Program-made: the position numbers and the translations under genes | In this document: in pieces, positions 27,585-64,000 of the stretch | Position numbering within the stretch: the stretch's first letter is position 1 | How the letters are laid out: the number at the start of each line of letters is the position of its first letter | Notes under the pieces: model-generated | The model's input: the letters and a program-made list of their open reading frames with translations, nothing else | Databases searched by the model: none | What the model was told of the DNA's origin: nothing | NCBI RefSeq assembly: GCF_000143415.4 | Contig: NW_003314271.1 | Location: forward strand, 1 to 64,000 | Source: Selaginella moellendorffii | Taxonomy: Eukaryota > Plantae > Lycopodiophyta | Direction: 5' to 3' | Length of the DNA: 64,000 nucleotides

Positions 27585-27794
27585 TTCTCCTCTAAAACCC
27601 CTAAAATCCAAAGACACAACACAGGCAGCTCCATTCTTTTAGAATCTCTACTGCTGGAGATCATCAAAGCACGAATGCGCTGCGCACAAAATCACGAAAA
27701 ACCTCACCCGATCGGCGCCCACGCCCAGCGCCTCGAGCAAATATTATCGCTCGCCTCTTTTAGGTCAACACGGCACTAAAAGTTAGCGAGGTAT

Positions 27795-27855
27795 CTAAGG
27801 ATTAAAAGTTACGAAGGACTAAAAGTTACTACCAAGGATTTAAAAGTTACTACTC
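27795..27855. repeat. Short degenerate tandem repeat (TAAAAGTTACT-AAGGA) upstream of the aminopeptidase promoter
   Basis: About three units; a related array at 40296-40362. Confidence 0.7.
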
Positions 27856-28444
27856 GTGGCCCCGCGACCAAGACTGATTGGTTTAATCTTCCTTTGCCTG
27901 ACAGAAAGGATCGATCACCTCATTGATAAGATGATTTTCATTCAAGAACAGACCGAGCCTGGTCTCAAGGAACATTGTTTTCTCCACGACTTTTGGGAAG
28001 TACTAGACAACCTTCAAATCTGCTATGGCCAGTTCGCACAGAGCACCTTATGGAAACTGCTACTGAGCCTTACACCACCCATCTCTATGCTTGTCCCGGC
28101 TCCAGTCACGCTGCTCTACTTGCGAAACAGAAGAATGCGAGTAATGAGCTCATCGATTCCATCCTGGGAGTTCCATGGCGGTTCACGTTCCTGGAGCCAG
28201 CGCTAACTTTAGAAGGACGAGACAAAGACTAAAAGCAAGTTATCAAAGCGCTTACAGCATTGGGACTCCTATATATTATCTAAAAAAAAAGGACCTCCCG
28301 GAAAGTCTAAATTTAAGAATTTACACTACCCTAAATTTAGTACAAGCTCATTGTTTAGTACAAGAAAGGCTCTGCGTTTACTGTAACAAAAGCAAAAAGA
28401 TATTATTTTATATATAAACACAAGAAGGAATATCTTGTGATAAA

Positions 28445-29017
28445 TTAATCCATTACCGGCCTGTTGTCAAATTCATCCGAAAGGCAGTAAAAAAAGAAGT
28501 GATGGTTGATTGCAATTAGGATGTTATTCAATATAGCATTTCTAAAGAAGAAAAGACTAAAACTAAAAAAGAAAAACAAAAAGAAAATTTACCATTCATG
28601 AGTGACCCAAAACGCATCTTTTATTGCATTAGTGAATTCTGGTTTAGCACAATTTGGTAGAAACTGGACATTTAGTTTTATCCGTTGATATATTTGCTTG
28701 TTAGGTAAGGGGGAAAAGTTGCCTCCGCAGGCATATCCTCAAGCCGAGGAAAGTAGGCCCTTTGTCCCTAGAAATTATGCAAAGAAAAATAATATTACAA
28801 AGCCCGATACAAATATAAAACTTACACTTCTTTCCTAGAAAAACTTATCTATTGGATATTCTCCATGCTCTGTTTGCCTTTCTAACTGCTACATATGGAT
28901 ATGTAGTCTTCACTCGATTGATACCCCCTAAACAAAGTAAAACAGGAAAAGATCAAATCCATCTAATTTAGAACATTGCACACCTGAGAGAATTCCTAGA
29001 GATGATCTGGTTTTCAT
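28445..29017 (-). pseudogene. Orphan 4-exon gene family, degenerate copy A
   Basis: Homologous to 36899-37496; premature stop in exon 2 and deletions. Confidence 0.75.
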
Positions 29018-29299
29018 CACTGGAAAAAGCATTCACAGTAGAGCTAAGAGATGAAACTCAACATGCACTGGCAAACTCAGTAAAGACAAGAGAAAGAAAA
29101 AGCTTGCATAGTTAGATAGGGGAATCTTTGGCTGTCTCGTTGAGATTTGGCCTTCTCGACCTCCCAAAACACAACAAAGAAAGAAGCATCTTGGATGGAC
29201 AATTGCCAGCAAGGATTCCCTAAAGAAAAAGAGAAAAAAATGAGAGAAAACTAGACACAACAAACCTGGAAAGAACGGCCAGCGATGGCAGCCGGATCA

Positions 29300-32718: not shown

Positions 32719-32803
<85 letters not shown>

Positions 32804-35700
32804 CATATGTAAAACTGACCAACTTACAAAATATATTTCACATGGATGCCAATTATTTCATTTGTGATACAAATAAAACAATAATTATAACCCAACAATC
32901 ATAAAAGTAATAATTTCTTTTGATTTACTTTTAATAACTTATCTTAATCCCTCTTTTAATAATTTAAAGTCAATGTAGATGAGACTAAATTATGCCTTGA
33001 AAGCTATTCAAAGTATCCATGAATGTTAGCTCTATCCTTGAAAGATTTCAAGAGAAAAATGTTTAATTATAAATTTTCAATCTAGAATTGATGTGAGTTG
33101 TATTATGCAACAATTAAGATAGTGTAAGATTTGCAAGATCATCAATTCTTTGAAAAATACCACTAACATGACAAAAATAATAGTTGAAAAAAAATTATTT
33201 GAAAGCACAACCTTTAGATTTTCATAATGTTTGACAACACTTTGTACATTTCCTAAGGAACACCATGTGGAGTATACTTACAAATCAAAAAATAAAATTA
33301 AAGTACTTTAGAAAAATCTTATACTCATAGCTTGATTAGAACTCCATCTTTATCAACTATGAATTATTTGAGGAAAGAAATAAACAATTGGAAAGTAAAA
33401 CAAAATGAATTGGAGATTCTTTAAATTGCATCAATATCTTTAATCGAATTTAAAAATAACTTATAATACATGAAGATTCCGTTTTGTTTTTTTTTTTTTG
33501 CAACAACACAATGTGTAGTTGGTAGTTTTTCCTATATACTTCAGCGGTAAGTCATGAGAAAGCAAAAAGCCCTCAGGCACATTATCGGGTTGTTTCTTGA
33601 CTTCATTCAACATGCCATTCCCTTGTTTGTGTGAATGATATATGAAGTTGCTTTCTATTTTGCTCAAGAAAAAAAAGATAACATGGAAAAAAGGGCAAAG
33701 AATAAAGAATCAATATACCTCTCATTTAAAGATGAGCTCTTAGCAAACCAAATGGCTTTATGCTTAATAGAGCTGAGAAAATAACTATAGGTAAAACAAA
33801 CAGTCTAAATGACACTAAAACTAATGTGGGAGACAAGCACATGACAAAAGATCAGGAGAAACAACACAATTTACACTACTAATCTCATACTTTCTGTTGT
33901 GCACCTATAAACCACCCAAAGAAAGTTGAGAGTATAGAGTAGGTGGGAGTTTAGAAGAGCCTAAAAAGAGAGAACAAGAGTAATCTAAACCAATTTTGCA
34001 AAAGTTTGCCTATACTTCTTGACAGATAGTTAGACTGCTAAAACAAAATAAACAAAATATAATGAATGTTTGGTGCTTTGGTTAGCTCAACTATATAAGT
34101 AGTTAACAACAAATGAATCCATACTAGCAAATGTTTATTTAGCTAGGTGTCGTTGTAAATAAACTTTTTTTAAAAATGCATTCAATTAAATTAAAGAAAT
34201 ATATAAAAGGAAAAGAGAATTTAAAGGAAATCCAACAATTTAATAACCATATGTGTTGGGATTGTGGATGACATAATTAAATTTAATGATGTTGAGTAAA
34301 TTGTTGTATGCTTCTTATTGATTTTCAATTTGCTACTTAAACTCACACACAACATATATTGTGAATGAATATTGTGAATCAAATATATTTACGAACTTAT
34401 GGTTGCCAAAAGTTTATGGATCTACATCACATAACACAAAAATGTGATTATAGTGATGCTCAAATGCTTATGATTGATGATCACCAAAGTTTGTTGTTGA
34501 GATGGGAGTATTAGCCATTTCTCCTTGCCAAAATACAAGTCGATTATTATTTGGACAATATTATCGGAAAGATTTTAGAATATAGCTCCGTGGCATGCAC
34601 ATAAATTTAAATAAACCAAGTGCATTATTTTATCCCTAATAGTTCATATAATTTGCAATTCTCTTTGCTCTCCACAACCATGAATATAAATAAATATAAA
34701 GAAAATGTATAATTAATTTAACCTTCCATTTGCACAAAAACAATTGTTTGCTACTAATGAGGTTGGATCATTATTGTTGTCTTCCAAAAGCATCTTGAAA
34801 ATTAAATGAGCCATTTCTATACTTTACCATTGTTTGTGTCAATCTTTATATAAAACGTGAAAATGGGGTTAGGTTATTTTTGATATAAAATTTTATATAA
34901 AATTGTCGTACTTCCTTAGTTGTATTTCCATGGTAGAGTGGATGGGGAAATAAATAAAGCAATCACTCTTAGTGCATATTATGCTTTGTAACTTTGTCTT
35001 AAATGTTTTTTAATTGATTTGATTATTATTAAGATAAATGTACATGTATATATGTAAGACATATGTAAGACTGACCACCTTGAAAAATATATTTCACATG
35101 CATGCCAACTGTTTCATTTGTGATACAAATAAAGCAATGATTATAGCCTAGCAATCATAAAAGCAATAATCTCTTTTGACTTACTTTTAATAACTTATTT
35201 TAATCCCTCTTTTAATAATTTGAAGTCAATGTAGATGAAACTAAATTATGCCTTGAAAGCCATTCAAAGTATCCATGAATGTTAGCTCCATCCTTGAAAG
35301 ATTTTAAGAGAAAAATGTTTGATTATAAATTTTCAATCTAGAATTGATGTGAGTTGTATTATGCAATAGTTAAGATAATGTAAGATTTGCAAGATCATCC
35401 ATTCTTTAAAAAATACCACTAGCATGACAAAAACAATGGTTGGATAAAAATTTATAAAACTCTAATAGCACAACTTTTAGATTTCCATAATGTTTGAGAA
35501 CACTTTGTACATTCTCTAAAGAATAATACATAGCTATGTGGAGTATGCTTACAAATCAAAAATAAGATAAAAAAACTTTAGAGAAATCTTATATTTGTGG
35601 CTCAATTGAAACTCCATGTTTGTCATCCAGATCATTCAAGGAGAGAAATAAACAATTGGAAAGAAAAACAAAATGGATTAAAGATTCTTTAAATTGCATT
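30868..35700 (-). repeat. Tandemly duplicated AT-rich ~2.1-2.6 kb unit (30868-33430 and 33587-35700), possibly a decayed LINE; extra internal duplication at about 31400-32225
   Basis: Long collinear identity between the units; weak AIxFARxxxF motif like a non-LTR retroelement C-terminus; no long ORF. Confidence 0.6.
32724..32798. repeat. (TA)n microsatellite
   Basis: About 37 TA units; the paralogous site near 35045 is unexpanded. Confidence 0.95.
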
Positions 35701-36170
35701 AGTCAAGTTTGAAAATGGCTCATAATACACTAAGATTCCTTGCAACAACACAATGTGTAGTAAATAACTTATAAATTCAAGAAGAGAAAGTACAAATATG
35801 GTAACTTTTCCTGTATACTTAAGCAGTAGAGCCATGAGGAAACAAGAGGTTGTGAGCCATGGTGTAAGCTGAGTTGCCTTCTGTACAATTTCCATAAGGC
35901 GCTGAGCATCGCCCAGGTGCAAATTGGCCTAGCTGAGTGACAACTTGTGGCTAGTTCAAGGTTGTCCAGTACTTCACATGGTCACCGAAAGTCTTGAAAC
36001 AAAACTCTGGCAAAATTTGTAAAGTCTTTCCTGAAAAGAAAAGAAAACTAGCTTATCCTATTTATTCATAAAATACAGCATACACCTCGATTGCCTGTGG
36101 CAAGTCATAGTGATTGAGATTGGAATAAGGCTGGATCCCTTTCAGGAGCATGTAATCTATAACACTACTC
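35697..36170 (-). pseudogene. Glycoside hydrolase family 1 (beta-glucosidase) internal fragment
   Basis: IDYMLLKGIQPYSNLNHYDLPQAIE|...CFKTFGDHVKYWTTLN*PQ...FAPGRCSAPYGNCTEGNS...YTMAHNLL...H...GILVYYEP; the catalytic NEP glutamate codon is a stop. Confidence 0.8.
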
Positions 36171-36373
36171 CATAACATTCGCGGGCAAGGATCCCTGTCA
36201 GCGCTGAGCGAGATTAGCTCAAATTTGCCATCATCCCAGACAATATGAGGCGATCAAGAACACAAATCCCCCATCCAAATCCCATTTGGCCCAGCTCTCC
36301 AATTGCAAATAGCTGGATAAAGAACGCTATAATTTCCTCTCTTTAGTTAGCTAGTGTCTCAATACAGTGACGT

Positions 36374-36510
36374 TGAAGATTGGAATGGCTATCTGGATTG
36401 TCGATCCCATTGGCTTCATGCTCAGTGTTGCTGATTCTTGAGCTGTTGAGATTCGTATTTATCCTCTGCTCAAGCCACAGGACCCGTGTTTTGCACTTCT
36501 GTGATCTCAA
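36374..36510 (-). pseudogene. 5' remnant (promoter plus about 15 codons) of the DJ-1/PfpI gene
   Basis: Near-identical to 41088-41215 (MKPMGSTIQIAIPIF). Confidence 0.8.
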
Positions 36511-36898
36511 TTGCAAGAAACTATTATTGTTCCAAAAAGTTTGCAACATGAGTATGAGAGCTTTCTAGGTTTTTTCAGGGCTGCTGCACGGGATTGTGTT
36601 CTTTCTCTAGGGAACCAGCCGCCAAGGTTTGTTGTGTCTAGTTTTCTCTACAAGCTCTCGTTTTTTTCTCTTTTTCTTTAGGAATCCTCGCTGGCGGGAT
36701 TGCCATCCAAGCTGCTTCTTTCTAGGTTTGTTGTGTATTCCCCTGTCCAACTGTGCAAGCTTATTATTTTCTCTAGGTGAACCAGGGTGCTCCATCTTTA
36801 CTGAGTTTGCAGGGCTGTCTTTTACGTCTTTTCTCTTGTGGTGCAGGTTTGTTGTTGAGTTTCGTCTCTTAGCTCCACTGTGAACGCTTTTTCCAGTG

Positions 36899-37496
36899 AT
36901 GAAGACCAGATCATCTCCAGGAATTCTCTTAGGTGTGCAGTGTTTCAAACTGGATGGATTTGATCTTTTCCTCTTTTTCTTTGTTTAGGGGGTATCGATC
37001 AAGTGAAGACTACATATCCATATGTAGCAATTAAAAAAGCAGACAGAGAGCATGGAGGATATCCAATGGACAGGTTTTGCTATGAAAGAAATGTAAGTTT
37101 TATATTTGTCTCGAGCTTTGTAATATTGTTTTTCTTTGTGTAATTTCTAGGGACGAAGGGCGTACTTTCCTCAGCCTGAGGATATGCCTGCAGAGGTAAC
37201 CTTTCCCCCTTACCTAAAGGGCACGCGCTTGGAGGAGGCGCAGCAGGCATATCAACGGAAGAAACCAAATATCCGGTTTTTACCAAATTGTGCCAAAGCG
37301 GAATTCAGTAAAGTAACCAAAGGTGCATTCTGGGTCACTGTTGGACGGTAAATTTTCCTTTTGTTTCTCTTCTTTAGTTTTATTTTTTATTTTTTTCAGG
37401 AATTCTACCTTGGATAGCATTCCAGCTGCAATTAACCATCTACTCTTTTTTTACTGCCTTCCAGATGAATTTGACGATGGGCTGGCGATGGACTAG
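36899..37496 (+). CDS. Orphan 4-exon gene encoding a 143-aa protein, intact copy B
   Basis: Exons 36899-36932, 36989-37092, 37151-37347 and 37400-37496 joined by GT-AG introns of 52-58 nt give an open frame MKTRSSPGILLGGIDQVKTTYPYVAIKKADREHGGYPMDRFCYERNGRRAYFPQPEDMPAEVTFPPYLKG...FYCLPDEFDDGLAMD*. Confidence 0.65.
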
Positions 37497-37792
37497 TTTA
37501 TCACAAGGTATTCTTTATTGTGTTTATTTTTTTTCTTTTGTTGCAGTAAACATGAAGCCTTTCGTGGCTATTATAAATTTAAGGTAGTAAAGAAAGCATT
37601 TTTGATAAATAATATATAGGAGTCTCGATGCTGTAATCGCTTTAAAGTTAGCTCGCTTTGAGAGCCTGTGTTGCCTTTTTCCCATTGGCTATCACCTCGG
37701 TTTTGCCTCGTCTTGCTAAAATTAGCGTTGGCTCCGGGAACATGAACCGCCGTAGAACTCTTGGGATGGAATTGAGGAGCTCATCACTTGCA

Positions 37793-39177
37793 TTCTTCTA
37801 TTTCGCAGCCTTTGCCATGTGAAGGATTGGACAACCTTTAACTCAGCTCAGGTATGACAATGGCACACCATGGAAACTCATCTTGAATTGAAACTCAAAA
37901 GTTCCTTAAGACTAAAGGCAAACAATTGCTGGATCTCAAGCTCAGGATTGCCTTGGTAAACTTGGTTTTGAGAAAAAATTAATGCTTTCTGAGATCAAGT
38001 CATAGTTTAAGCATTAACATCAATGCTTTATTAAGATTAACTTGCTAGAGTTTGTTCTTTTGCAAGAGGTAAAATGGAAGTCTTAAAAAACTGTGTTGGA
38101 CTTCCATTGACTTCCGTTGACTTTGAGCTCTCAGGTCAGTTGGTGCATGTTCCCGAGTTTTCTTTTCTTTTTTTTTTTGTGAGACTCCTTTGATTTTGCT
38201 GCAGTGGTAAAAAACTGTCAGGTAGTGTGGTAGGCCATAATTGTTTATGTTTGAGGGATTTGCAAAAGCTTCCCACAATATTTGTTTCTCAAGGATATTA
38301 TCTATCTATCGTTTATAATCTTGTGGTGCCCAACCTGGAAGCACATGAAAAATGAATGCAAGTGTTTGTGAAATTTGCTAATACGAAAGAACAAGGATTT
38401 ACTTTGGCATTGATCAAATTTGCGAGAATAGTTCTTGGATGCTGCCCTTCTAGACGTCACCCACACATATCTGCGAGAAAGAGCTTCCACTGTTCTAAGA
38501 GAATCATCATCTGATCAGCAAGACATTTACCTCCACGATTTTCTCTGAGGCTTCCGGGACCAGGATCACTTCCACGAAAACTTCCGCGACCTGATCCACG
38601 AGCCACAAGACCTTTTAGATGCATGCTTTCCTGCTAGAGTTTCTTACCTTATTTTGACAATTATGGTTAATCACTAGGACTTATACTTACCTTCTCTTAT
38701 TTTCAATCTAGAGGCATATCTCTTATTAAATGGATATCTAAAGTCTCACAAGAAAGTATTTCATTTGTTCAATCATCAAGGGAAAAACCATAAGTTCCAA
38801 TGATGACCCAACATCAAAAAGCATGTAAGATGTTTAGTTAGTAAGACAATAAATTTTACTAGAAAATAATTCAAAGTAGTAGTTAATGCCGTCCGCAGGC
38901 AAGGATCCTTATCGGCACTGGGCAAGATTAGCTCAAATTTGTTGTCATCCCAGACAATATGAGGCGATCAAGAACACGAATCCCTCTAAACGCCCCATCC
39001 AAATCGCACTAGAAAATTCGGCCCAGCTCTCTAATTGCAAGTAGCTGGATAAAGAACGATATAATTTCCTCTCTTTAGTTAGCTAGTGTCTCTCTTGGTG
39101 AAAAGCTTAAAAGCCAAATGCCGGCCTGAGCTGAGGTTGACCAAGCCACGATAAGTCGAACACTTGGACTTTCTTAA
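37793..39177. repeat. Composite duplicated block (GH1 trace, 3' end of the Rossmann-fold gene, unknown segments)
   Basis: Near-identical to 62624-64000; parts recur at 48100-48950 and inverted at 55530-56300. Confidence 0.85.
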
Positions 39178-39277
39178 GTCACTAGGAAAGACAATAGCAC
39201 GTCAGAAACGCCCTCCTTATCACATTTGATCCATTCTTCTCCTGAAACGACCTCCTTATCACATCCAGAACCCTGAG

Positions 39278-40120
39278 AAAAGGCTGAACAGGAAGTGACT
39301 TCAGCATCAGATGACGGCTGGTGAGCGCAACTTCTTCCAGCTTCCGTTCTTCGTAGTTGATTTTAACAAAGAGAAGTTTCACGTCACGACCATCCAACAC
39401 CAATGGCGGGCTTTCACCTGCATGGCTTCTGGTTAATGACTACCAAGATAGCGAACGAAACAACGAAAGTGAAAAAGAAAATACTTAAGTTTCTCGGCAA
39501 AACCCGGATCTTAAACACCACGGTTGTCTTTTTCTCAGACAGAACAAATTTCAGCTCGACCTGGATAGAAGGTGGAAAAAACGAAATCAGCATCCAATTA
39601 GTACGGTGCGTTACCGTGTCAAAGTGATAGCCAGTGGCCTTCAAAAAGATCTCCTTGGGCGCCTCTTTGACAGCCATCTCTTCAGCTACAGGAGAAGCTC
39701 CAACACTCACTGTGGAGAATTGGCTAGACCCTGCAAAAGCACGCTACAGTTCGACATGCCTTAGTCCGTAAGCTTCGCGAAAATGGAAAAAAAAAAAACG
39801 TACCGGCAATTTCAATCGGCTTCCGCGCACGCAACCAAGTTCCTACATTTTTTGTTCGAAGATGAGAACCAAAAACAATGCTTGAAACGAATTTCGAAGA
39901 CAAGGCAAACGTGGAACTTACCGAGTGAAGCTCCTTGCCTGCAAAAGAGAGTAGCAAATTCAGAGGAAGTAAATTGACATGAAAAGGAAGAACCGAGAGA
40001 GAACAAAAAAATCAGAAGCAAGAAGAAATAAAGCACCGGGAAAGCTCTGGTGGCTAATGACAGTCGCGAGGAGACGGCCAAGACGAAACTAAGCCCTGGT
40101 CTCTGGTGACGGTGGCCATT
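39278..40120 (-). pseudogene. 5' fragment of the aminopeptidase N gene (promoter region continues to about 40290)
   Basis: Matches 26705-27584 with deletions: [30 protein letters not shown]...LPVQPF, then breaks off. Confidence 0.88.
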
Positions 40121-40410
40121 TTCTCCTCTTAAACCCCTAAAATCCAAAGACACAACACAGGCAGCTCCATTCTTTTAGAATCTTTACTGCTCGAGATCAT
40201 CAAAGCACGAATGCGCTGCGCACAAAATTGCGAAAAACCTGTCGAGCAAATATTATCGCGCGCTCCTCTTTTCGGTCAACACGCCACTGAGGTGATTAAA
40301 AGTTACTAAGGACTAAAAGTTACTAAGAAAAGTTACTAAGCATTTAAAATTTACTACTAAGGATCGATCACCTCATTGATAAGACGATTTGCATTCAAGA
40401 AGAGATGGGA

Positions 40411-41134
40411 TTATTTGGGATTATCGATCCACAGCTCATGGGCAAGCTTGACAATCTCCTCCCCGGCCTTGCAAGGAGAGCCAGCATCGTATGGCGGCTG
40501 CGGATCATACTCGATCATCAGCTGCACCGCTTTGGCAATCTTCTCATTCGTGATGATCGAGGCCAAGTAGATGGCCATGTCGATCCCTGAAGAAACTCCT
40601 GCAGCGGTCACGATCTTTCCCTGCTTGATGTACCTCTGGCTCGTCACCTTGGCACCATATTCCTTAAGCTGCGGATACGCGGCCCAGTGTGTCGTGGCTT
40701 TCACGCCCTTGAGCAATCCCGCTGCGCCGAGGATCAGAGCTCCAGTGCACACTGAAGTGGTGAATGTTGTGCATTCGTGAGCCTGGAAGATCGACACAAG
40801 AACAAGCAGGGCTGGATCGATCGAAATGGATGAAGAAACGAGCAATTACCTTGCGGATGTAGTCGAGGAGTGGCTTGTGATCTAACGGCAGGAGCTTGGG
40901 AGTGCCTCCTGGAACTAGCAGAATGTCAGGATTGGGCAGATCTTCAAAGCTGGCGCTTGCTTCAATCTTGAATCTGCCTTCGTCTGCAACAACGAGGCCC
41001 AGCTTGTCGCTCACGAAGGTAACGCTCACTCCCGGGAGGCGATGGAGCGCTTCATACGGCCCAATTGCATCCAACACAGTGATGTTGTTGAAGATTGGAA
41101 TGGCTACCTGGATTTTCGATCCCATTGGCTTCAT
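40411..41134 (-). CDS. DJ-1/PfpI family protein of the bacterial isocyanide hydratase (InhA/ICH)-like clade, 218 aa, one intron (40783-40849)
   Basis: ITVLDAIGPYE, DILLVPGG, TSVCTGALILGAAGLL, KATTHW, VTAAGVSSGIDM, AVQLMIEYDPQPPYDAGSP; exons 40850-41134 and 40411-40782 splice in frame. Confidence 0.9.
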
Positions 41135-41449
41135 GCTCAGTGTTGCTGATTCTTGAGCTGCTGAGATGGGTATTTATCCACTGCTCAAGCTGAACCAGGG
41201 GCCCATGTGTTGCACGTGTTTTCGTTCATAACCAAGTTGTAAGCAACACAATAACAGCTGTTATTCCAATTGTCAACATGAAATAGTTATATGCAAAATC
41301 AAAGTGGCAATTTGTATATTTTATAAAATGAAAATGACATGTACAAAAATCAAGTCTATTACAATGATTTTTAATCATATTTACTTTTATATAAGTAAAA
41401 GACAACATTAATATTAATTAATTTTAAACACTGACTAGTTTAGTCCTGA

Positions 41450-42730: not shown

Positions 42731-42829
42731 GATAGAACAGGCAATGCAGACTCTCAAAGCGAGCTACATTGTCGGCCTATATATTATTTATCACATACAA
42801 GAAGTAATACTTTGTAATAAATTAGTCTA

Positions 42830-43266
42830 TTGCCGACTTGTTATCAAATTCGTCCGGAAAACAGTAAAAAAAGAATTAACAAGAAAAAATTAAACCTAAA
42901 GAAGAAAAACAAAAAAAAAACTTACTTTTGGTTGCTCTATTAAATTTTAGTTTGGCACCATTTTGTAAAAATTGAATATTTGGTTTCATTCATTGATATG
43001 CTTGTTATGGCGCCTATGAGGTAAAGGGGAAAGATTGCCTCTATGAAAGATTCTCTAAGATTGCTTAAAGTTTACATTTCTTTCATCGCAAAACCTGTCC
43101 ATTGGATATCCTCCATGCTCTCTATCTGCCTTTCTAACTGCTATATATGGATATGTAGTCTTCACTCAGATCGATACCCCCTAAACAAAGCAAAACAAAA
43201 AGATCAAATCCATCCAATTTAGAAGTACACACCTGAGAGAATTCCTGGAGATGATCTGGTTTTCAT
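42830..43266 (-). pseudogene. Orphan 4-exon gene family, degenerate copy C
   Basis: Homologous to 36899-37496 with deletions in exons 3-4. Confidence 0.7.
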
Positions 43267-43809
43267 CACTGGAAAAAGCGTTCACAGCGAAGTTACAGTA
43301 AAGACGCAATGCAATGGCCTCTTGCTGGTCTGGTTCACCTAGAGGAAAAAAATAAACTTGCAGAGTTCGTCTCCTTGAGATTCCGCTTTCTCAACCTCCC
43401 AAAACACAACAAAGCACAATCCTGACTAGCCCCGAAATAACCTAGAAAGTCCAGCGATGGGCTGGTTCGGACCGCCTCGTACTTCCTGAGCTCCGGCTCA
43501 AAGGTGACGGATCTCTTCTTGAGCACTCCCAAAGGCTGACGGCAACTCTTCCTTAATGCGATCGGCAAAGGATCTTCACACACAACCTCGTTCGCCCACA
43601 CAACATATGCTCGTTTACGAGTTTCTCCCAAACGTCCTCTTCGAAGACACGGAGGACCTGGAAGTTCCGTTTTGGTACAGCTCTCTGGGTATATCTCCAC
43701 CAGGTTTAAGCTGGCGGGATCGTTCTGCGTCTACTCTGGCAGTGATGCTGCCTGCCGGAAGACCATCCTTGTCACTGTTGAGAACTTGCGTAGAGTTACC
43801 TGAGTTCAG

Positions 43810-46600: not shown

Positions 46601-47224
46601 CTCACAATCTTCCCACAGCAATCAAGCCCCCAATCAAGTGTCAATAGTTTGTGGCAATTGACAGTGATGGAAAAGAAGACATCTCTACTTCTAGGCTCTT
46701 GTTTATTTTTTCACAGCTACCATCGTCTCCTTTGTAGACAGAGCTAATCGGCTTTCAGTTTTCATGAAGGAAAACTGGATGAAGAATTGCTGAGAGCTGC
46801 CGTCAGCAAGAGACCCCCACAATGATCACCACAGCATGCCAGCATCATTGCCGGAGTATTGTGGACCTAATCATCGTTTGAGCCAAATGAGCGCGATCCA
46901 TGCCCAATATTATGGGAGATTTCTAGGTTTTTCCGGGGATCTAGGGAACCCGGTGGCTGTTCTCCCGGTTTGTTGTGTCTACAAGCTCTCGTTTTTCTCT
47001 CTTTTTCTTTAGGGAATCCTCGTGGATTGTCCATCCAAGCTGCTGCTTTCTTGGTTTGTTGTGTTTCGGGAGGTCAAGAAGGCCGAATCTCAAGGAAACG
47101 GCCAAAGATTCCCCTGTCTAACTGTGCAAGCTTGTTTTTTTTCTCTTGTCTTTACTGAGTTTGCCGGTGCAGGTTTGTTGTTGAGTTTCGTCTCTTAGCT
47201 CCGGTGTGAACGCCTTTTCTAGTG

Positions 47225-47820
47225 ATGAAGACCAGATCATCTCCAGGAATTCTCTGAGGTGTGTAGTGTTTTAAACTGGATGGATTTGATCTTTTCCTGT
47301 TTTTCTTTGTTTAAGGGGGTATCTATTAAGTGAAAACTACATATTCATATGTAGCAGTTAAAAAAGTAGACAGAGAGCATGGAGGATATCCCATGGATAG
47401 GTTTTGCTATGAAAGAAATATAAGCTTTATATTTGTCTCGGGTTTTGTAATATTGTTTTTCTTTGTGTAATTTCTAGGGACAAAGGGCCTACTTTCTTCG
47501 GCTTGAGGATATGCCTGTGAAAGTAATCTTTCCCCCTTACTTAAAGGGCACATGCTTGGAGGAGGCATAATAGGCATATTAACGGAAGAAATTAAATATC
47601 TGGTTTCTACCAGATGGTGCTAAAGCAGAATTTAGTAAAGCAACCAAAGGTGTGTTCTGAGTCATTGTTGGACGGTAAGTTTTCTTTTGTTTCTTTTCTT
47701 TAGTTTTAGTCTTTTCTTTTTTAGGAATTCTAACTTGGATAGCATTCCAGCTGCAATCAACAATCTATTTCTTTTTATTGCCTTCTGGACAAGTTTGACG
47801 ACGGACCGGTGATAGACTAG
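47225..47820 (+). pseudogene. Orphan 4-exon gene family, full-length pseudogene copy D
   Basis: Collinear with 36899-37496 but with in-frame TGA/TAA stops and the intron-2 donor changed from GT to AT. Confidence 0.8.
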
Positions 47821-48714
47821 TTTATCATAAAGTATTCTTTTTTATAAATGCGAAGCTTTTTTGTACAGATCGCAGCTATTATAAGTTTAAGATAGTCGAA
47901 AGAGTCTTTTTGATAAATAATATATAAGAGTTTCGATGCTATAATTGCTTTGATGATAGCTCACTTTGAGAACTTATATTGCCTTTTTCCCAATGGTTAT
48001 CATCTCGGCTTCGCCTTGTCCTACTAAAGTTAGTGCTGGCTCTGGGAACATGAACCACCATGGAACTCCCAGGATGGAATTGAGGAGCTCGTCACTCGTG
48101 TTCTTCTATTTTGCCGTGTGAAGCATTGGACAACCTTTAACTCAGCTCAAGTATGACAATGGTGCACCATGAAACTCATCTTGAATTAAAACTCAAAAGT
48201 TCCTTAAGACTAAAGGCAAACGACTGCTGGATCTCAGGCCCAGGATTGCCTTGGTAAACTTGGTTTTGAGAAAAAATTAATGCTTTCTGAGATCAAGTCA
48301 TAGTTTAAGCGCTTTATTAAGGTTAACTTGCTAGAGTTTGTTCTTTTGCAAGAGGTAAATGAAAGTCTTCAAAAACTGCATTGGACTTCCATTCACTGAC
48401 GTTGACTTTGAGCTCTCAGGTCAGGTTCCCGAGTTTTCTTTTTTCTTTGTGAGACTCCTTTGATTTTGCTGCAGTGGTAAAAAACTGTGGAAAGCATAGG
48501 AAATCATCAGGTAGTGGTAGGCCATAGGAGGAACGATCTAGTTGTTTATGTTTGAGGGATTTGCAAAAGCTTCCCACAATATTTGTTGCTCAAGGATATT
48601 ATCTATCCATCGTTTATAATCTTGTGGTGCCCAACCTCGAAGCATGTGACAAATGAATGCAAGTGTTTGTGAAATTTGCTAATACGAAAGAACAAGGATT
48701 TACTTTGGCATTGA

Positions 48715-50500
48715 TCAAATTCGCGAGAATAGTTCTTGGATGCTGCCCTTCTGGACGTCACCCGCGCATATCTGCGAGAAAGAGCTTCCACTGTTCTAAG
48801 AGAATCCTCGTCTGATCAGCAAGACATTTACCTCCACGATTTTCTCTGAGGCTTCCGGGACCACGATCGCTTCCACGCAAACTTCAGCGACCTGATCCAC
48901 GAGCCGCAAGACCTTTTAGATGCATGCTGTCCTGCTAGAGTTTCTTACCTTTGATCGACTGATACCACCTATGAAGAGCGAGTCGGCTGGCGTCATGACG
49001 AGAGCCTCATCCTGGAACAAAAAGAAACGTTATCTCTAAGAAACTTAGGAGAGAATAGCAACGTTTACAGCGGGTGCGTTCTCTCGTAGACCAGCAGGCC
49101 TTACGATAGTGTACTCAAGCCCCGAGCGTTGCAAAGCTCTGCCTGCCTTTTCCTGAGGAAGGATAAAACGAGTGAGACAACATTCTTGCGAAGTTAAAGC
49201 TTGTTTCGCTTACCACCACAGAATGGGGATTATCTGGAGGAATGACGAGAATCGACGTAACCAGTATAAACTGCGAGTTAAATGTCAGTCTGGATAGACA
49301 ATACTTTCCTTGCTACCTTTTTCACTTGTCCTTGGTTCTTGGCTGCCGAGATAAGGTTCACAACTCCTTCATACTCGATCTGGAAAAAAATCACTCAGTG
49401 TCAAAGAGAATGTGATTAACAACTTAAGAACCTGGTAAGTCTTCATAATATCCAGCGGCAAAAACTTCGTCCCAATGACACACACGACCGCATTACTGTA
49501 AAGCTTGCTTTAGACTGGAAGATGAGAAAGAGCCAAACGTACCTATCACCCAGTGCTTACTTGAGAGTTTCGTATTTACAAATGTCGCCACGGACAGCCT
49601 GCTTGTCCAGAAAGAAGACACGTTACCAGAAAACGCAGTGACACCAGCAGCACAAATTTCAACTTACAGTCACGTTGCCCTGCTCGTTGAATCGATTGGC
49701 CTTATCACTTTGGCACCTCCTTTCGAGAGCTTTTCCACCACGAGCCTGAGTTTAGAGAATCAAAACTTGGTTACAAAGGCAAAAACGAAAGAAAAAAGCA
49801 AGAACGGAAAAACGAACTCACGAACCTTCCAGTTCTTCCCGAGGCACCGGCCACGAAAACCTTGAGATCAGCAAACCGCCCTTGATCGTGCCGAGGTTGC
49901 TCCTTTGGTTCCGTGCCATCTTGATCGTGCCGGGGCTGCTCCTTTGATTTCTTACCATCTTGATCGTGCCGGGGATGCTCCTTTGATTTTGTGCCTTTAG
50001 ACGAATCCACGGGAGTGCTGCCAGAAACTTCTTTCGAGACTGCCTCAGCCCCAGCTTCTACGTTCTCTCTCAAATCTCCTCCCAAAGAAGAGATGCCCTC
50101 GAGCCGATCTCTCTCTTCTGACTCTTCCACTCCATCGTCAGCTTCGTTCTCCTCTCTCAAATTACCTGGCAAAGAAGAAACGGCCTCGGGCTCTTCCGAC
50201 TCCTCAACTCCATCCTCGCCATCATCCGACGCAGCATCCTCGTCGGAGATTTCTTCATCCAGCGCATTATCGAGCAAAGATTTCTCTTGCCGATCTTCCT
50301 CAGCCACGTTGGGAGTCGAGCTATCCAGGATGTGAGGCTGCCGGACGAGCTCTTCCTCCACCGGATACGCTTATTCAGGAGCTTCATATGCCCTGCACAG
50401 ACCGATGCGATCAACAACAGCCAAGACGCAAGAACAAGAGAAGAAAATTTCCACTCACGAGCTCGCCGATGCTTCGTCCGCGCCACAATCTTCTGCATAT
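48715..50500 (-). pseudogene. NAD(P)-binding Rossmann-fold (TIC62-like atypical SDR) gene with acidic repetitive N-terminus, frameshifted
   Basis: KVFVAGASGRTG, IEYEGVVNLISAAK, FILVTS, LQRSGLEYTIVRPAGL, GGISRSK, VAEVCVEAI...KIVE, ICAGDVQKGSIQELFSRI*; small deletions break several exons; 5' end abuts a PPR 3' fragment. Confidence 0.78.
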
Positions 50501-50758: not shown

Positions 50759-50849
50759 AAAAGGTGTGATTTTTCCCAAGCAAATAGCTTGTATATCTAT
50801 CAAGAAGAATGCAACAACGAGCTTACGATCGCGAACTCCTTGATCTTTC

Positions 50850-55529: not shown

Positions 55530-55825
55530 AACGTTTCTTTTTGTTTCAGGATGAGATGAGGCCAGCCGACTCGCTCTTCATAGGTGGTATCAGTCGATCG
55601 AAGGTGGAAAGCATGCATCTAAAAGGTCTTGCGGCTCGTGGATCAGGTCGCGGAAGTTTGCGTGGCAGCGATCGTGGTCCCGGAAGCCTCAGAGAAAATC
55701 GTGGAGGTAAATGTCTTGCTGATCAGACGAGGATTCTCTTAGAACAGTGGAAGCTCTTTCTCGCAGATATGCGCGGGTGACGTCCAGAAGGGCAGCATCC
55801 AAGAACTATTCTCGCGAATTTGATC
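55530..55825 (+). pseudogene. Inverted 3' fragment of the Rossmann-fold gene (others at 38414-38640 and 63235-63470)
   Basis: MRPADSLFIGGISRSK...VAEVCVAAIVVPEASEKIVE...ICAGDVQKGSIQELFSRI*. Confidence 0.8.
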
Positions 55826-57015
55826 ACTGCCAAAGTAAATCCTCGGTCTTTCGTATTAGCAAATTTCACAAACACTTGCATTCATTTGTGACATGCTTCG
55901 AGGTTGGGCACCACTAAATTATAAACGATGGATAGATAATATCCTTGAGCAACAAATATTGTGGGAAGCTTTTGCAAATCCCTCAAAACACAAACAACTA
56001 GATCTTTCCTCCTATGGCCTACCACACTACCTGATGATTTTCTATGCTTTCCACTGCAGCAAAATGAAAAAAAGAAAACTCGGGAACATGCACCAGCTGA
56101 CCTGAGAGCTCAAAGTCAACGTCAGTGAATGGAAGTCCAATGCAGTTTTTGAAGACTTTCATTTACCTCTTGCAAAAGAACAAACTCTAGCAAGTTAACC
56201 TTAATAAAGCATTGACATTAATGCTTAAACTATGACTTGATCTCAGAATTTTTCTCAAAACCAAATTTACCAAGGCAATGCTGGATAACCAAGTTTACCA
56301 AGGCAATCCTATATTTAGAATCATCAATGAGAAACTGGAAGGTCTGGAGGCAGAAGATCTGGAGGAGTTCAGGAAATGGCTTTTCTAATTTGTCCTTATT
56401 GGCTTCTTGGTTTACATTTTAAAATTTGTCTTTATATGTTTCTTGGTTTTCTTAGTGTAAGTTATGGAATTGTGCCCAGTATTGATACATAATTCTAGTT
56501 TACAGATTTATATTTATATTATTTGCCCATACAGACATTTCAGGATGACCAACTCTATATATAGCAGTTGTTTGTCTTAGTCTTAAGGAACTTTGAGTTT
56601 CAACTCAAGACAAGTGAGTGAGGTGCCATTGTCATACTTGAGCTGAGTTAAAGGCTATTGAGTGTTTCACACAGCAGAGGCTGCAAAACAGAAGAATGTG
56701 AGTGATGAGCTCCTTGATTCCATCCCGGGAGTTCCACAGCAGTTCACATTCCCAGAGCCAACACTAACTTTAGCAGATGAGGCAAAGCCAAGGTGATAGC
56801 CATTGGAAAAAAAACAACACAAGCTCTCAAAATAAACTATCATCAAAGTGATTACAGCATCGAAACTCCTATATATTATTTATCAAAAAAGTTTTCTCTA
56901 CTACCCTAAATTTATAATAGCCGCAATTTATACAAAAAAAAGGCCATAAACTACCCTAAACTCATAATAACCGCAATTTATACAAAAAGAGGCCATAAAC
57001 TAATTCATTACCAGC

Positions 57016-57620
57016 CTAGTCCATCGCCGGCCCGTCGTCAAACTCGTCCGGAAGGCAGTAAAAAAAAAGTAACTCATTAATTGCAACTGGGATGTCATCC
57101 AAAGTACAATTCCTGAAAAATAAAATAAAAATAAAAATATAAAACTAAAGAGAAACAAAAGGAAAACTTACTGTCCAACAGTGACCCAGAACATGCCTTT
57201 AGTTGCTTTACTAAATTCTGCTTTGGCACCATTTGGTAGAAACTGGATATTTGGTTTTTTCTGTTGATATGCTTGTTGTGCCTCCTCTAAGCACACGCCC
57301 TTTAAGTAAGGGGGAAAAGTTACCTCCGCAGGCATATCCTCAGGCCGAGGAAAGTAGACCCTTCGTCCCTAGAAATTAAAGAAAGAAAAATAATATCACA
57401 AAGCCTGAGAGAAATATAAAACTTACATTTCTTTCATAGCAAAACCTGTCCATTGGATATCCTCCATGCTCTCTGTCTGCTTTTTTAACTGCTACATATG
57501 GATATGTAGTCTTCACTCGATCGATACCCCCTAAACAAAGAAAAACAGGAAAAGATCAAATCCATCCAGTTTAAAACACTGCACACCTGAGAGAATTCCT
57601 GGAGATGATCTGGTCTTCAT
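57016..57620 (-). CDS. Orphan 4-exon gene encoding a 143-aa protein, intact copy E
   Basis: Same splice sites as copy B give MKTRSSPGILSGGIDRVKTTYPYVAVKKADREHGGYPMDRFCYERNGRRVYFPRPEDMPAEVTFPPYLKGVCLEEAQQAY...FYCLPDEFDDGPAMD* with no stops. Confidence 0.65.
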
Positions 57621-59475
57621 CACTGGAAAAAGCGTTCACACTGGAGCTAAGAGACGAAACTCAACAACAAACCTGCACCGGCAAACTCAGTAAAGACAAG
57701 AGAGAAAAAACAAGCTTGCACAGTTAGACAGGGGAATCTTTGGCCGTCTCCTTGAGATTCGGCCTTCTCGACCTCCCGAAACACAACAAACCTAGAAAGA
57801 AGCAGCTTGGATGGACAATCCCGCCAGTGAGGATCCCTAAAGAAAAAGAGAGAAAAACGAGGGCTTGTAGAGAAAGCTAGACACAACAAACCTGGAAAGA
57901 ACGGGCAGCGATGGCGAGAGAAAGAACACAATCCCGGAAAAACCTAGAAATCCTTCTATCCAACAGCATGGATCGCGCCTCATTTGGCTCAAACGATCCA
58001 ACAGTGTGCATCGTGACTAAAACCTGCAAACTAACCTCTCTTGAGATCAAGCCGGTTGTCCTCCTTAGAAACTCGTAAACTAGCACTTTGTTGTGCGGGC
58101 CGCGGAGCTGGACAAGGTTGTCGTGAGACAAGAAAGGGATGTGTTGCAGAAGTCCCTGCCGCTCTTGTTTATTTCTTCACAGCTACCATCGTCTCCTCTG
58201 TAGACGGAGCCACTCGGCTTTCAGTTTTCATGAAGGAAAACTGGATGAAGAACCGTTGAGACCCGCCGTCAGTAAAAAACCCCCCACAATGATCAGGTCC
58301 ACAGTACTCCAGCAGTGATGCTGGCAGCCAGAAGACCATCTTCGTCACTGTCGGGAACCCTGCTTTGGAGCTTTTGCGGCTTCGATTCTCCAGAAGGAAA
58401 GTGCTTACCGCCACCACCACTACTAGCTGTTTAGCTTGGAGGATCGCACAAACATATCTCTGGTGTCATCAAGAAAGCCACGAACCTCCCAACCTAACAG
58501 AGGCAAGAAAAAATATCAGTAGCTGCAGTAACATTGAATCTAAAGACCTACAGCACCAAGAGGCATTGACCCTGGACTGAAAAGACCTCAAACCAGCCAG
58601 CTGTTTCTCAATTAATAACTAACTATTAAAATAGACCAACTTTGGTTCCCGCTATACGAGATGTCACTGAATGCCAGCAGACTATTACTCTTGTCCATGG
58701 GTTAGAAATTCTGGAGAAAAATAAATAATACGCACCTGCAACGATTTAGAAGAAGTCGAGAGAGCAGTGGGGACCATGGTTATGCTGAAATCCAAATTTT
58801 CCGCAAGGAGCTCCCCAGAAAAACTATTCGTCATTGGATATGTCTCTAGACGGTGATAGTAGAGTCTGTGAGTTCCAATTCCAGAAAGAACGCAGGAGGC
58901 CATCCACAAGTAGATAGCTATAATTCCCTCACCTTTATCTGTTTTCTTCCAGGATGTGAGGCCGCCGGACGAGCTCTTCCTCCACCGGATCATACAGATT
59001 ACGCTTAGTCAGGAGCTTCATATGCCCTGCACAGACCGATGCGATCAACAACAGCCAAGATGCAAGACCAAGAGAAGAAAATTTCCACTCATGAGCTCGC
59101 CGATGCTTCGTCCGCGCCACAATCTTCTGCATATCGGGTGGTGGTCTTGTTGATCAAAGGCCGCGAGTGCCGGTATGTGTTCATCCCGGGATGGAGGACA
59201 GATATCTTGAGCCGGGTGGACAAGATGAGTGAAGCTTGCGAGGACGATGTCTAGACGAAGCGGTGGTGATTTCTCCGTTGGTGTGGCACCAGCGGCTTGT
59301 AGAAAGTGGAAGAATTGAGGTGGCTTTTGAGGAGCTGAGTGGTGAAGCTGTATACAATCTTATGGCAAATGCTTGCTCGACCTGAAAAGGTGTGATTTTT
59401 CCCAAGCAAATAGCTCGTATATCTATCAAGAAGAATGCAACAACGAGCTTACGATCGCGAACTCCTTGATCTTTC

Positions 59476-62623: not shown

Positions 62624-64000
62624 TCATTCTTCTATTTCACAGCCTCTGCCGTGTGAAGCACTAGACAACCTTTAACTCAACTCAGGTATGACAATGGCGC
62701 ACCATAGAAACTCGTTTTGAATTGAAACTCAAAAGTTCCTTAAGACTAAAGGCAAACGATTGCTGGATCTCAGGCCTAGGATTGCCTTGGTAAACTTGGT
62801 TTTGAGAAAAAATTAATGCTTTTTGAGATCAAGTCATAACATCAATGCTTTATTAAGGTTCACTTGTTAGAGTTTGTTCTTTTGCAAGAGGTAAAATGAA
62901 AGTCTTCAAAAACTGTGTTGGACTTTCGTTGATTTCCGTTGACTTTGAGCTCTCAGGTCAGCTGGTGCATGTTCCCTTTCTTTCTTTTTTTTTTTTGTGT
63001 GAGACTCCTTTGATTTTGCTACAGTGGTAAAAAACTGTCAGGTAGTGTGGTAGGCCATAATTGTTTATGTTTGAGGGATTTGCAAAAGCTTCCCACAATA
63101 TTTGTTTCTCAAGGATATTATCTATCTATTGTTTATAATCTTGTGGTGCCCAACCGGGAAGCACGTGACAAATGAATGCAAGTGTTTGTGAAATTTGCTA
63201 ATATGAAAGAACAAGGATTTACTTTGGCATTGATCAAATTTGCAAGAATAGTTCTTGGATGCTGCCCTTCTAGACATCACCTGCACATATCTGCGAGAAA
63301 GAGCTTCCACTGTTCTAAGAGAATCGTCGTCTGATCAGCAAGACATTTACCTCCACGATTTTCTCTGAGGCTTCTGGGACCAGGATCGCTTCCACGAAAA
63401 CTTCTGCGACCTGATCCACGAGCCACAAGACCTTTTAGATGCATGCTTTCCTGCTAGAGTTTCTTACCTTATTTTGACAATTATGGTTAATCACTAGGAC
63501 TTATACTTACTTTCTCTTATTTTCAATCTACATATCTCTTATTAAATGGATATCTAAAGTCTCACAAGAAAGTATTTCATTTATTCAATCATCAAGGTTA
63601 AAACCATAAGTTCCCATGATGACCCAACATCAAAAAGCATGTAAAATGTTTAGTTAGTAAGACAATAAATTTTACTTTAGTCGAGAAAATAATTCAAAGT
63701 AGTAGTTAATGCCGTCCGCAGGCAAGGATCCTTATCGGCACTGGGCAAGATTAGCTCAAATTTGTTGTCATCCCAGACAATATGAGGCGATCAAGAACAC
63801 GAATCCCTCTAAACGCCCCATCCAAATCGTACTAGAAAATTCGGCCCAGCTCTCTAATTGCAAGTAGCTGGATAAAGAACGATATAATTTCCTCTCTTTA
63901 GTTAGCTAGTGTCTCTCTTGGTGAAAAGCTTAAAAGCCAAATGCCGGCCTGAGCTAAGGTTGACCAAGCCACGATAAGTCGAACACTTGGACTTTCTTAA
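62624..64000. repeat. Second copy of the composite block at 37793-39177
   Basis: Collinear near-identity through to the window end (...cacttggactttcttaa). Confidence 0.88.

What the first reader, a model, noticed from the sequence alone, without database searches (positions are those of the whole stretch)
36899..37496. Hidden multicopy orphan gene: a 4-exon, 143-aa ORF inside what looks like a dispersed repeat
Seen: the repeat at 28.4, 36.9, 42.8, 47.2 and 57.0 kb (both orientations) splices through three canonical 52-60 nt GT-AG introns with matching phases. In two diverged copies (36899-37496 on +, 57016-57620 on -) it gives the same-length open frame, and homopolymer runs keep the frame in both. 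Three other copies are broken. No exon is long enough to appear correctly in the ORF track, and I recognise no family. Inference: either a lineage-specific gene undergoing birth-and-death amplification, or the cargo or 3' part of a mobile gene. Upstream AG/GT-bounded segments may be 5' UTR exons or lost coding exons.
Basis: partly seen in the sequence, partly recalled or inferred. Interest (0 to 1): 0.8.

Follow-up and report, generated by a model that had tools for sequence, protein, structure and literature searches.

The report
Spikemoss-only small gene, locally copied
The four-exon reading frame is real and shows signs of being kept by selection, but it is an uncharacterised spikemoss-only gene that public databases already list as a hypothetical protein, copied within one rearranged gene cluster.

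Summary
Observation confirmed. Positions 36899-37496 (+) splice through three GT-AG introns (56/58/52 nt) into a 143-codon frame. Copy C (57620-57016, -) gives the same length. Copies at 47.2, 28.4 and 42.8 kb are broken.

The window is Selaginella moellendorffii, and the gene is not hidden:
- Copy A is SELMODRAFT_409113, modelled with a different 3' splice.
- Copy C is RefSeq LOC112345813, modelled with a longer N-terminus and stopping after exon 3.
- Two relatives, SELMODRAFT_407076 and 407073, lie on a second scaffold, probably the other haplotype.

Exon 3 searched against 1.8 billion representative proteins found only this family. Pfam and PDB give nothing, and AlphaFold2 gives no confident fold (pLDDT 34).

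Between the two intact copies, synonymous changes are in excess: 24 against 14.9 expected under a mutation-spectrum-matched null (P about 0.003). There are no coding indels, against 19 in the non-exonic parts. The broken copies look neutral by the same test.

I found no transposon hallmarks. The roughly 2.1-kb unit lies in a duplicated, inverted and recombined block that also holds M1 aminopeptidase and isocyanide hydratase paralogues.

Verdict: a species-restricted orphan gene family evolving by birth and death. Function and transcription are untested. Interest is modest.

The parts
36899..36932 (+). Copy A, exon 1 of the 143-aa frame. ATG is at 36899; the exon itself probably begins at the acceptor at 36896/36897.
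   Evidence: The ATG and the first 11 codons are conserved in all five copies.
36989..37092 (+). Copy A, exon 2 (start phase 1).
   Evidence: Identical residues in P0001. 2 % divergence from copy C.
37151..37347 (+). Copy A, exon 3 (start phase 0, 65 codons).
   Evidence: Synonymous excess between A and C: 15 of 27 differences against 8.6 expected, P=0.003.
37400..37496 (+). Copy A, exon 4 (start phase 2), with the TAG stop at 37494-37496.
   Evidence: The same frame is used in P0002 and P0005. 9 of 16 differences are synonymous against 5.3 expected, P=0.03.
36579..36846 (+). Copy A, three upstream exon-like segments (36579-36626, 36682-36725, 36777-36846), each bounded by AG and GT. Probable 5' UTR exons. 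The JGI model P0001 uses the first and third as coding.
   Evidence: Sequence read directly. P0001 mapping. This part differs in structure between A and B/C/D.
36589..38650 (+). Whole repeat unit R, copy A. It continues to 39277 in the form shared with copy F.
   Evidence: Self-BLAST. Identity profile.
57016..57620 (-). Copy C, intact 4-exon 143-aa frame: exons 57620-57587, 57530-57427, 57368-57172, 57112-57016. This is RefSeq LOC112345813.
   Evidence: The P0004 sequence is identical through exon 3.
55606..57936 (-). Whole repeat unit R, copy C.
46972..48951 (+). Repeat unit R, copy B, a pseudogene (ORF equivalent about 47225-47820). It has six in-frame stops, a 1-nt frameshift in exon 4 and the intron-2 donor changed from GT to AT.
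   Evidence: Neutral substitution pattern.
28121..29289 (-). Repeat unit R, copy D, a pseudogene with a 2-nt and a 22-nt exonic deletion plus stops.
42797..43367 (-). Repeat unit R, copy E, a fragment: exons 1-2 at 43295-43066 plus degraded pieces of exons 3-4.
62625..64000 (+). Copy F, only the non-coding 3' part of R (equivalent to 37791-39177 at 94 % identity). It is lodged inside a coding exon of aminopeptidase copy X3.

Best explanation
The ORF is the conserved core of a small, taxonomically restricted ('orphan') protein-coding gene family of Selaginella moellendorffii.

The gene is a short multi-exon transcription unit. It has two or three small upstream exons that are probably 5' UTR, then four coding exons split by 52-59-nt introns. 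It lies within a roughly 2.1-kb DNA unit.

That unit was copied at least five times, in both orientations, inside one block of segmental duplications. The block also holds three copies of an M1 aminopeptidase gene and copies of an isocyanide-hydratase-like gene. The copies then evolved by birth and death:
- Patchy gene conversion kept some stretches 94-98 % alike.
- Strongly transition-biased mutation, probably deamination of methylated cytosine, eroded the rest.
- Two copies (A and C) kept the frame under moderate purifying selection, and three decayed.

The product is a hydrophilic protein of about 16 kDa with no detectable relatives and no confidently predicted fold. My inference is that it acts as a small, largely disordered protein through short conserved blocks, such as ...TTYPYVA.KKADREHGGYPMDRFCYERN... 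and ...FFYCLPDEFD..., rather than as an enzyme.

Shown here: the anatomy, the copies, the species restriction within the databases, and the selection signature. Inferred: transcription, translation, the start codon and the mode of action.
For: Anatomy:
- Canonical splice sites and phases in A and C.
- Exon GC is 39-51 % against 19-36 % in introns.

Independent gene models:
- JGI and RefSeq models use the same exons 1-3, and P0002 and P0005 use the same exon 4 frame.

Selection between A and C:
- 24 synonymous and 22 nonsynonymous differences, against 14.9 and 29.8 expected from type- and CpG-matched random mutation, P=0.002-0.004.
- Of six frames, only the proposed one shows the excess.
- Exons 3 and 4 each show it separately.
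- Nei-Gojobori dN/dS is 0.22. My spectrum-corrected estimate is about 0.44.
- The pseudogene copies B and D look neutral under the same test.
- There are 0 indels in 429 coding nt against 19 in about 1360 non-exonic nt. That predicts about 6 in the coding part, Poisson P about 0.0025 (my arithmetic).

Restriction:
- The exon-3 search of 1.84 billion representatives returned only P0001 and P0002, plus one low-complexity chance hit.
- The word search with P0002 found four proteins, all S. moellendorffii, on two scaffolds.
- No short models were found.

Local context: self-BLAST map, aminopeptidase domain and exon reading.
Against: - No transcript or peptide evidence could be consulted.
- The three database models disagree on both ends of the CDS.
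- The frame staying open in A and C is not itself significant: the probability of no stop is 0.22-0.25.
- The selection signal rests on 43 differences in exons 3-4 of a single pair.
- Exons 3-4 (14-17 % divergent) are no better conserved than intron 2 (12 %), and far less than the non-coding 37951-38640 stretch (2-6.5 %).
- Structure predictions are very poor: pLDDT 33.7 and 0.30 for the Atlas model. That fits disorder but also fits a non-protein.
- Transitions make up 41 of 46 exon differences, which suggests repeat-type methylation, more typical of silenced DNA.
Confidence: 0.58

Rival explanations
1. A relic: the unit was once a gene, or is merely transcribed, and all copies are now decaying as methylated repeats. 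On this reading the synonymous excess between A and C is left over from an earlier period of constraint, and no functional protein is made today.
For: - Three of five copies are clearly dead.
- Transition bias is extreme: 41/46, 50/57, and 31/31 in exon 3 of B-C.
- Exons are not better conserved than nearby non-coding stretches.
- Intactness is expected by chance in about a quarter of cases.
- No fold is predicted.
- The RefSeq model of copy C stops after exon 3.
Against: - The lineage-specific changes of A and C, polarised with B and D, still lean synonymous: 7 of 13 and 6 of 14, against about 4 expected each.
- There are no coding indels in A-C despite frequent indels around the exons.
- All splice sites are intact in both copies.
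- A third copy, on the other scaffold, is open through all four exons (P0002).
Confidence: 0.22
2. Cargo or part of a mobile element: the unit R moves as, or with, a non-autonomous transposon (Helitron or Pack-MULE-like, or another kind), and the ORF is a captured or passenger sequence.
For: - Copies occur in both orientations and in different flanks.
- A 1.4-1.5-kb piece of R (37791-39277) sits inside a coding exon of aminopeptidase copy X3. The same 23 nt lie on its left in F and on its right in A.
- A roughly 350-nt direct repeat (36015-36360 and 38734-39092) brackets copy A.
- A copia-type integrase fragment lies nearby at 43796-44296.
Against: - The piece that moved into the aminopeptidase exon does not include the ORF.
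- No terminal inverted repeats, LTR ends, poly-A tail or Helitron ends were found at any boundary.
- No transposase or reverse-transcriptase similarity was found in any exon or database model.
- Introns are retained, which argues against retroposition.
- Copy boundaries differ from copy to copy, as expected of ectopic recombination.
- Protein relatives exist on only two scaffolds.
Confidence: 0.1
3. Artefact: an accidental open frame, stitched together from GT and AG dinucleotides in a T-rich repeat by both the reader and the gene finders.
For:
- The three database models differ at both ends.
- No homologue, domain or fold was found.
Against: - The frame-specific synonymous excess is absent from the five control frames.
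- There is an indel deficit in the exons.
- There are 0 stops in 143 codons against 5-8 in the other frames.
- The exon/intron GC contrast is sharp, and intron lengths are uniform at 52-59 nt.
Confidence: 0.07

Closest known systems
Taxonomically restricted (orphan) genes of plants, e.g. Arabidopsis QQS (from general knowledge, not tested here)
   Same: A short protein, no homologue outside one lineage, no Pfam domain, a poor or disordered structure prediction, and a location in a fast-rearranging region.
   Different: This one has a multi-exon structure with four coding exons, and five local copies with birth and death. Neither expression nor phenotype is known.
Database models SELMODRAFT_409113 (EFJ30312.1), LOC112345813, SELMODRAFT_407076 (EFJ32999.1) and SELMODRAFT_407073
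   Same: They are the same loci or their close paralogues or alleles, with identical exons 1-3.
   Different: - 409113 uses an earlier donor in exon 3 and so reads exon 4 in another frame.
- LOC112345813 reads on into intron 3 and stops.
- All four models add N-terminal extensions from upstream exons that are not conserved between copy A and the others.
Tandem or segmental gene clusters evolving by birth and death with gene conversion (the general model known from multigene families)
   Same: Intact and dead copies sit side by side. Identity is mosaic, at 2-3 % against 14-22 % divergence within one unit. Neighbouring genes were co-duplicated.
   Different: The family is tiny and species-restricted, copies lie in both orientations, and one fragment landed inside a neighbour's coding exon.
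Gene-fragment-carrying transposons (Pack-MULEs, Helitrons)
   Same: Repeated units that contain exon-intron structure and lie in varied flanks.
   Different: No terminal repeats, no characteristic ends and no consistent boundaries were found. There is no donor gene elsewhere in the protein databases.

Membership tests
Taxonomically restricted (orphan) protein-coding gene | No homologue outside the lineage | tested here: met
   phmmer of exon 3 against 1.84 billion representatives found only two S. moellendorffii clusters plus one low-complexity chance match. The word search found four proteins, all S. moellendorffii. Pfam, PDB and the Atlas gave nothing. Limit: unannotated genomes of other Selaginella species could not be searched.
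Taxonomically restricted (orphan) protein-coding gene | Intact ORF with functional splice signals | tested here: met
   Copies A and C.
Taxonomically restricted (orphan) protein-coding gene | Evolutionary signature of translation (purifying selection in frame) | tested here: met
   Synonymous excess with P about 0.003, in the proposed frame only. Exonic indel deficit. The effect is moderate and comes from a single pair.
Taxonomically restricted (orphan) protein-coding gene | Transcription and translation | not testable with these tools
Transposable element or its cargo | Terminal repeats (TIR or LTR) or characteristic ends with target-site duplication at consistent boundaries | tested here: not met
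   No TIRs or LTR ends. Copy boundaries differ between copies. The only duplication-like feature is a 23-nt sequence around the ORF-less 3' fragment, and both its sides could not be seen at one locus.
Transposable element or its cargo | Transposase, reverse transcriptase or integrase coding capacity in the unit or a longer parent | tested here: not met
   No Pfam hit in any exon or database model. No longer relative was found.
Transposable element or its cargo | Dispersal over unrelated genomic sites | tested here: inconclusive
   All copies in the window lie in one duplicated cluster, and protein relatives occur on two scaffolds only. The genome itself could not be searched.
Any Pfam or PDB protein family | Significant sequence or fold match | tested here: not met
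   The model's pLDDT of 33.7 is too low for a fold search.

The most novel reading that the evidence does not exclude
A very young protein-coding gene, born in S. moellendorffii or its close kin, has been caught while its family is still being sorted. Two copies are kept by selection and three are dying, inside a cluster where pieces of the same unit are also inserted into neighbouring genes: an aminopeptidase coding exon is split by its 3' part. This would give a tractable case of how a new gene spreads and is pruned in an early vascular plant.
Probability: 0.3. Interest if true: 0.45.

Novelty: new member of a known kind. Interest (0 to 1): 0.27.

Why it matters
If it is expressed, this is a clean small example of orphan-gene birth and death in a lycophyte. 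It has live and dead copies side by side, and the corrected gene model (143 aa, four exons) differs from all three kinds of database model. It does not open a new kind of biology. The practical value is a better annotation of SELMODRAFT_409113 and LOC112345813, and a candidate for studies of new-gene evolution. The side observation of an aminopeptidase paralogue interrupted in a coding exon by a piece of the same unit shows how actively this locus rearranges.

Tried and rejected
- Pfam on exons 2, 3 and 4 by reference, and on the four database proteins: no hits.
- PDB sequence search with P0002: none.
- ESM Atlas with exon 3 and with P0002 residues 98-231: only scores of 0.82 or less, the level that shuffled proteins reach.
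- AlphaFold2 on P0002 with the small family alignment: pLDDT 33.7. I therefore ran no fold search, since it would be meaningless.
- P0003, a 436-aa repeat protein hit at E=2e-6: a 22-residue Pro/Glu-rich match repeated six times, rejected as chance.
- Rfam at gathering threshold on the whole window: nothing. In E-value mode on 36000-39400: only two weak C/D-box snoRNA-like matches at 38693-38785 (-), 21-23 bits against a threshold of 45.
- tRNA scan: none.
- RNA folding of the highly conserved 37950-38650 stretch on both strands: z-scores +0.23 and -0.77, no structure signal.
- A possible minus-strand small ORF at 38457-38624 was read by eye. It runs into a stop after any plausible splice, so I rejected it.
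- Search for short gene models with exon 3 (36-114 aa range): none.
- Literature search for the four accessions: no paper.
- The bacterial promoter/terminator scan is irrelevant to a plant gene.
- One Pfam call failed on a frame with stops. I replaced it with direct translation.
- Earlier-findings look-ups by words and by sequence were blank.
Searches were made exon by exon by reference, and with database proteins that contain the joined reading.

Full report
**Organism and setting**

The window is from Selaginella moellendorffii. I confirmed it independently: the proteins encoded here are GenBank and RefSeq entries of that species. Short introns of 50-60 nt are normal for this genome.

**Checking the observation**

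Joining 36899-36932, 36989-37092, 37151-37347 and 37400-37496 gives 432 nt, which is 143 codons plus TAG. The introns are 56, 58 and 52 nt, all GT...AG, and the exon start phases are 0/1/0/2.

On the minus strand, 57620-57587, 57530-57427, 57368-57172 and 57112-57016 give a 143-aa product of the same length. Its introns are 56, 58 and 59 nt.

The other five frames of the spliced sequence hold 5-8 stops each. Exon GC is 39-51 % against 19-36 % in the introns.

Self-BLAST and a MAFFT alignment confirm the further copies:
- Copy B (46972-48951, +) has six in-frame stops, a 1-nt loss in the exon-4 T-run and the intron-2 donor changed from GT to AT.
- Copy D (29289-28121, -) has 2-nt and 22-nt exonic deletions and stops.
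- Copy E (43367-42797, -) keeps exons 1-2 and scraps.

A, B and C share about 36589-38650, roughly 2.1 kb. A sixth partial copy, F (62625-64000), holds only the non-coding 3' part (equivalent to 37791-39177 at 94 % identity).

Upstream of the ATG, copy A has three further AG/GT-bounded segments: 36579-36626, 36682-36725 and 36777-36846.

**It is already annotated, and it has no relatives**

I searched exon by exon by reference. The joined 143-aa product was not sent to any search or folding tool.

- Pfam finds nothing in exons 2, 3 or 4.
- phmmer of exon 3 (65 aa) against 1.84 billion representative proteins gave three hits. P0001 (218 aa, 95 % identity) and P0002 (231 aa, 83 %) are real. P0003 is a repeat protein whose 22-residue Pro/Glu-rich match is chance.
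- P0001 is SELMODRAFT_409113 (EFJ30312.1) on a 3.09-Mb scaffold. P0002 is SELMODRAFT_407076 (EFJ32999.1) on a 3.97-Mb scaffold.
- A word search with P0002 added P0004 (RefSeq LOC112345813, 198 aa, on the 3.09-Mb scaffold) and P0005 (SELMODRAFT_407073, on the 3.97-Mb scaffold), and nothing else.
- No shorter models exist.

Mapping back to the window:
- P0001 is copy A. It has an extra first exon at 36080-36151, an earlier donor in exon 3 (after 37322), and therefore another frame in exon 4.
- P0004 is copy C. It has an N-terminal extension through the upstream exons and a stop where intron 3 is read through.
- P0002 and P0005 come from the other scaffold. The published assembly holds both haplotypes of the sequenced plant (PMC3095285), so they are probably allelic or near-allelic copies.

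No paper mentions any of these accessions. So the gene is not hidden, but it is wholly uncharacterised and, as far as the databases reach, confined to this species.

**Is it a protein-coding gene?**

The decisive test I could run was the substitution pattern between the two intact copies.

Nei-Gojobori dN/dS for A-C is 0.22. However, 41 of the 46 differences are transitions, which inflates that method's dS. I therefore drew random mutations of the same type and CpG context on the same sequence.

- The null expects 14.9 synonymous, 29.8 nonsynonymous and 1.3 stop changes. The observed counts are 24, 22 and 0, with P=0.002-0.004 in either direction. My corrected omega is about 0.44.
- Repeating the test in all six frames, only the proposed frame is significant (P=0.0026). 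The others range from 0.07 to 0.98.
- The same test on pairs that include the broken copies (B-D, C-D) gives neutral values, which calibrates the method.
- A and C differ by no indel in 429 coding nt. They differ by 19 indels in about 1360 non-exonic nt of the unit. That predicts about six in the coding part, Poisson P about 0.0025 (my arithmetic).

Several points weigh against this reading:
- The mere absence of stops is not significant (P=0.22-0.25).
- All the signal comes from exons 3-4 of a single pair.
- Exons 3-4 (14-17 % divergent) are not better conserved than intron 2 (12 %), and much less than 37951-38640 (2-6.5 %).

That mosaic is best read as patchy gene conversion: 2-3 % divergence over 36850-37092, 12-22 % over intron 2 to 37950, and 2-6.5 % beyond.

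**What the protein is**

It is about 16.3 kDa and hydrophilic (GRAVY -0.5), with a pI of 8.7 in A and 5.9 in C.

AlphaFold2 on P0002 with the family alignment gives pLDDT 33.7. The Atlas's own model scores 0.30. PDB and the Atlas give no relatives. I ran no fold search because the model is too poor.

My inference is a small, largely disordered protein working through short conserved blocks. This is not shown.

**Is it mobile?**

I found no terminal inverted repeats, LTR ends, poly-A tail or Helitron-type ends. There is no transposase or reverse-transcriptase similarity. The boundaries are not consistent between copies. Introns are retained.

All copies lie in one block whose other parts are also duplicated:
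- A 5-kb segment X occurs at 22705-27854, 50509-55527 and 59137-62624, at 97 % identity. It encodes an M1 aminopeptidase on the minus strand (DUF3458_C; N-terminal exon read).
- The isocyanide-hydratase-like gene lies at 40411-41134. Per earlier notes, a second copy lies just beyond the window's end.
- The basic order is X, hydratase gene, R(-), then Y (29450-30347 and 58098-58952).

One event does look like movement. The 3' part of R (37791-39277) lies inside a coding exon of aminopeptidase copy X3. The junction is at 62624/62625 and splits ...SLPVQPF|[13 protein letters not shown].... The 23-nt AAAAGGCTGAACAGGAAGTGACT lies on its left in F and on its right in A.

That piece does not carry the ORF. 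The second junction of F lies about 100 nt past the window's end. I read this as ectopic insertion or recombination within a rearranging cluster, not as transposition, and the question stays open.

**Other checks**

- The well-conserved 37950-38650 part shows no RNA structure signal.
- It has no Rfam match above noise.

**Verdict**

- The best reading (0.58) is a species-restricted orphan gene family with two copies under moderate constraint.
- The rivals are a decaying relic (0.22), transposon cargo (0.10) and an artefact (0.07).
- Interest is modest. The kind of thing is well known, the loci are already in the databases, and nothing here points to a function.

**Limits**

- No plant genome or transcriptome collection was available.
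- Genome-wide copy number, expression and methylation remain untested.

Noticed in passing
window 62602-62700, 39260-39310 and 26690-26740: Aminopeptidase copy X3 is interrupted inside a coding exon (...SLPVQPF|[13 protein letters not shown]...) by at least 1.38 kb of the non-coding 3' part of the repeat unit. The same 23 nt (AAAAGGCTGAACAGGAAGTGACT) lie left of the insert in copy F and right of it in copy A. The right junction of F is about 100 nt beyond the window's end.
   Followed up: partly
window 22705-27854, 50509-55527, 59137-62624: Three copies, 97 % alike, of a roughly 5-kb segment encoding an M1 (PepN-type) aminopeptidase on the minus strand (DUF3458_C hit at 50945-51427). Only its N-terminal 1.1 kb is present at 39278-40358, next to the isocyanide hydratase gene.
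   Followed up: partly
window 37951-38640 (and 48250-48932, 55606-56283, 62780-63451): The non-coding 3' part of the unit is much more alike among copies A, B, C and F (93-100 %) than the coding exons 3-4 (83-86 %). It shows no ORF, no Rfam match and no RNA structure signal. This is probably recent gene conversion, but it remains unexplained.
   Followed up: partly
window 36015-36475: Directly upstream of copy A lies a mosaic. Positions 36015-36360 duplicate 38734-39092 (77-95 %), and 36360-36475 duplicate the 5' end region of the isocyanide hydratase gene (41072-41190, 91 %). The JGI model SELMODRAFT_409113 takes its first exon (36080-36151) from this mosaic.
   Followed up: no
window 36899-37496 versus its copies: Substitutions between copies are almost all transitions: 41 of 46 in A-C exons, and 31 of 31 in B-C exon 3. 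About half of the polarised ones are at CpG. This suggests deamination of methylated cytosine in repeated DNA.
   Followed up: partly
window 30869-35761: A very AT-rich stretch (27-36 % GC) made of two tandem copies of a roughly 2.3-kb unit (80-82 % alike) with internal 400-nt repeats.
   Followed up: no
window 43796-44296 (-): A Copia-type retrotransposon fragment (GAG-pre-integrase domain E=1.6e-13, weak integrase core) next to the fragmentary copy E.
   Followed up: no
window 10463-13153 (+), 21415-23572: An intact 897-aa pentatricopeptide-repeat gene without introns. Partial diverged duplicates of it (74-84 %) lie at 21.4-23.6 kb, reaching into the start of segment X.
   Followed up: no
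window 38693-38785 (-): Weak C/D-box snoRNA-like matches (snoR64 at 22.6 bits, SNORD59 at 21.2 bits, gathering threshold 45, E about 0.7). Probably chance.
   Followed up: no
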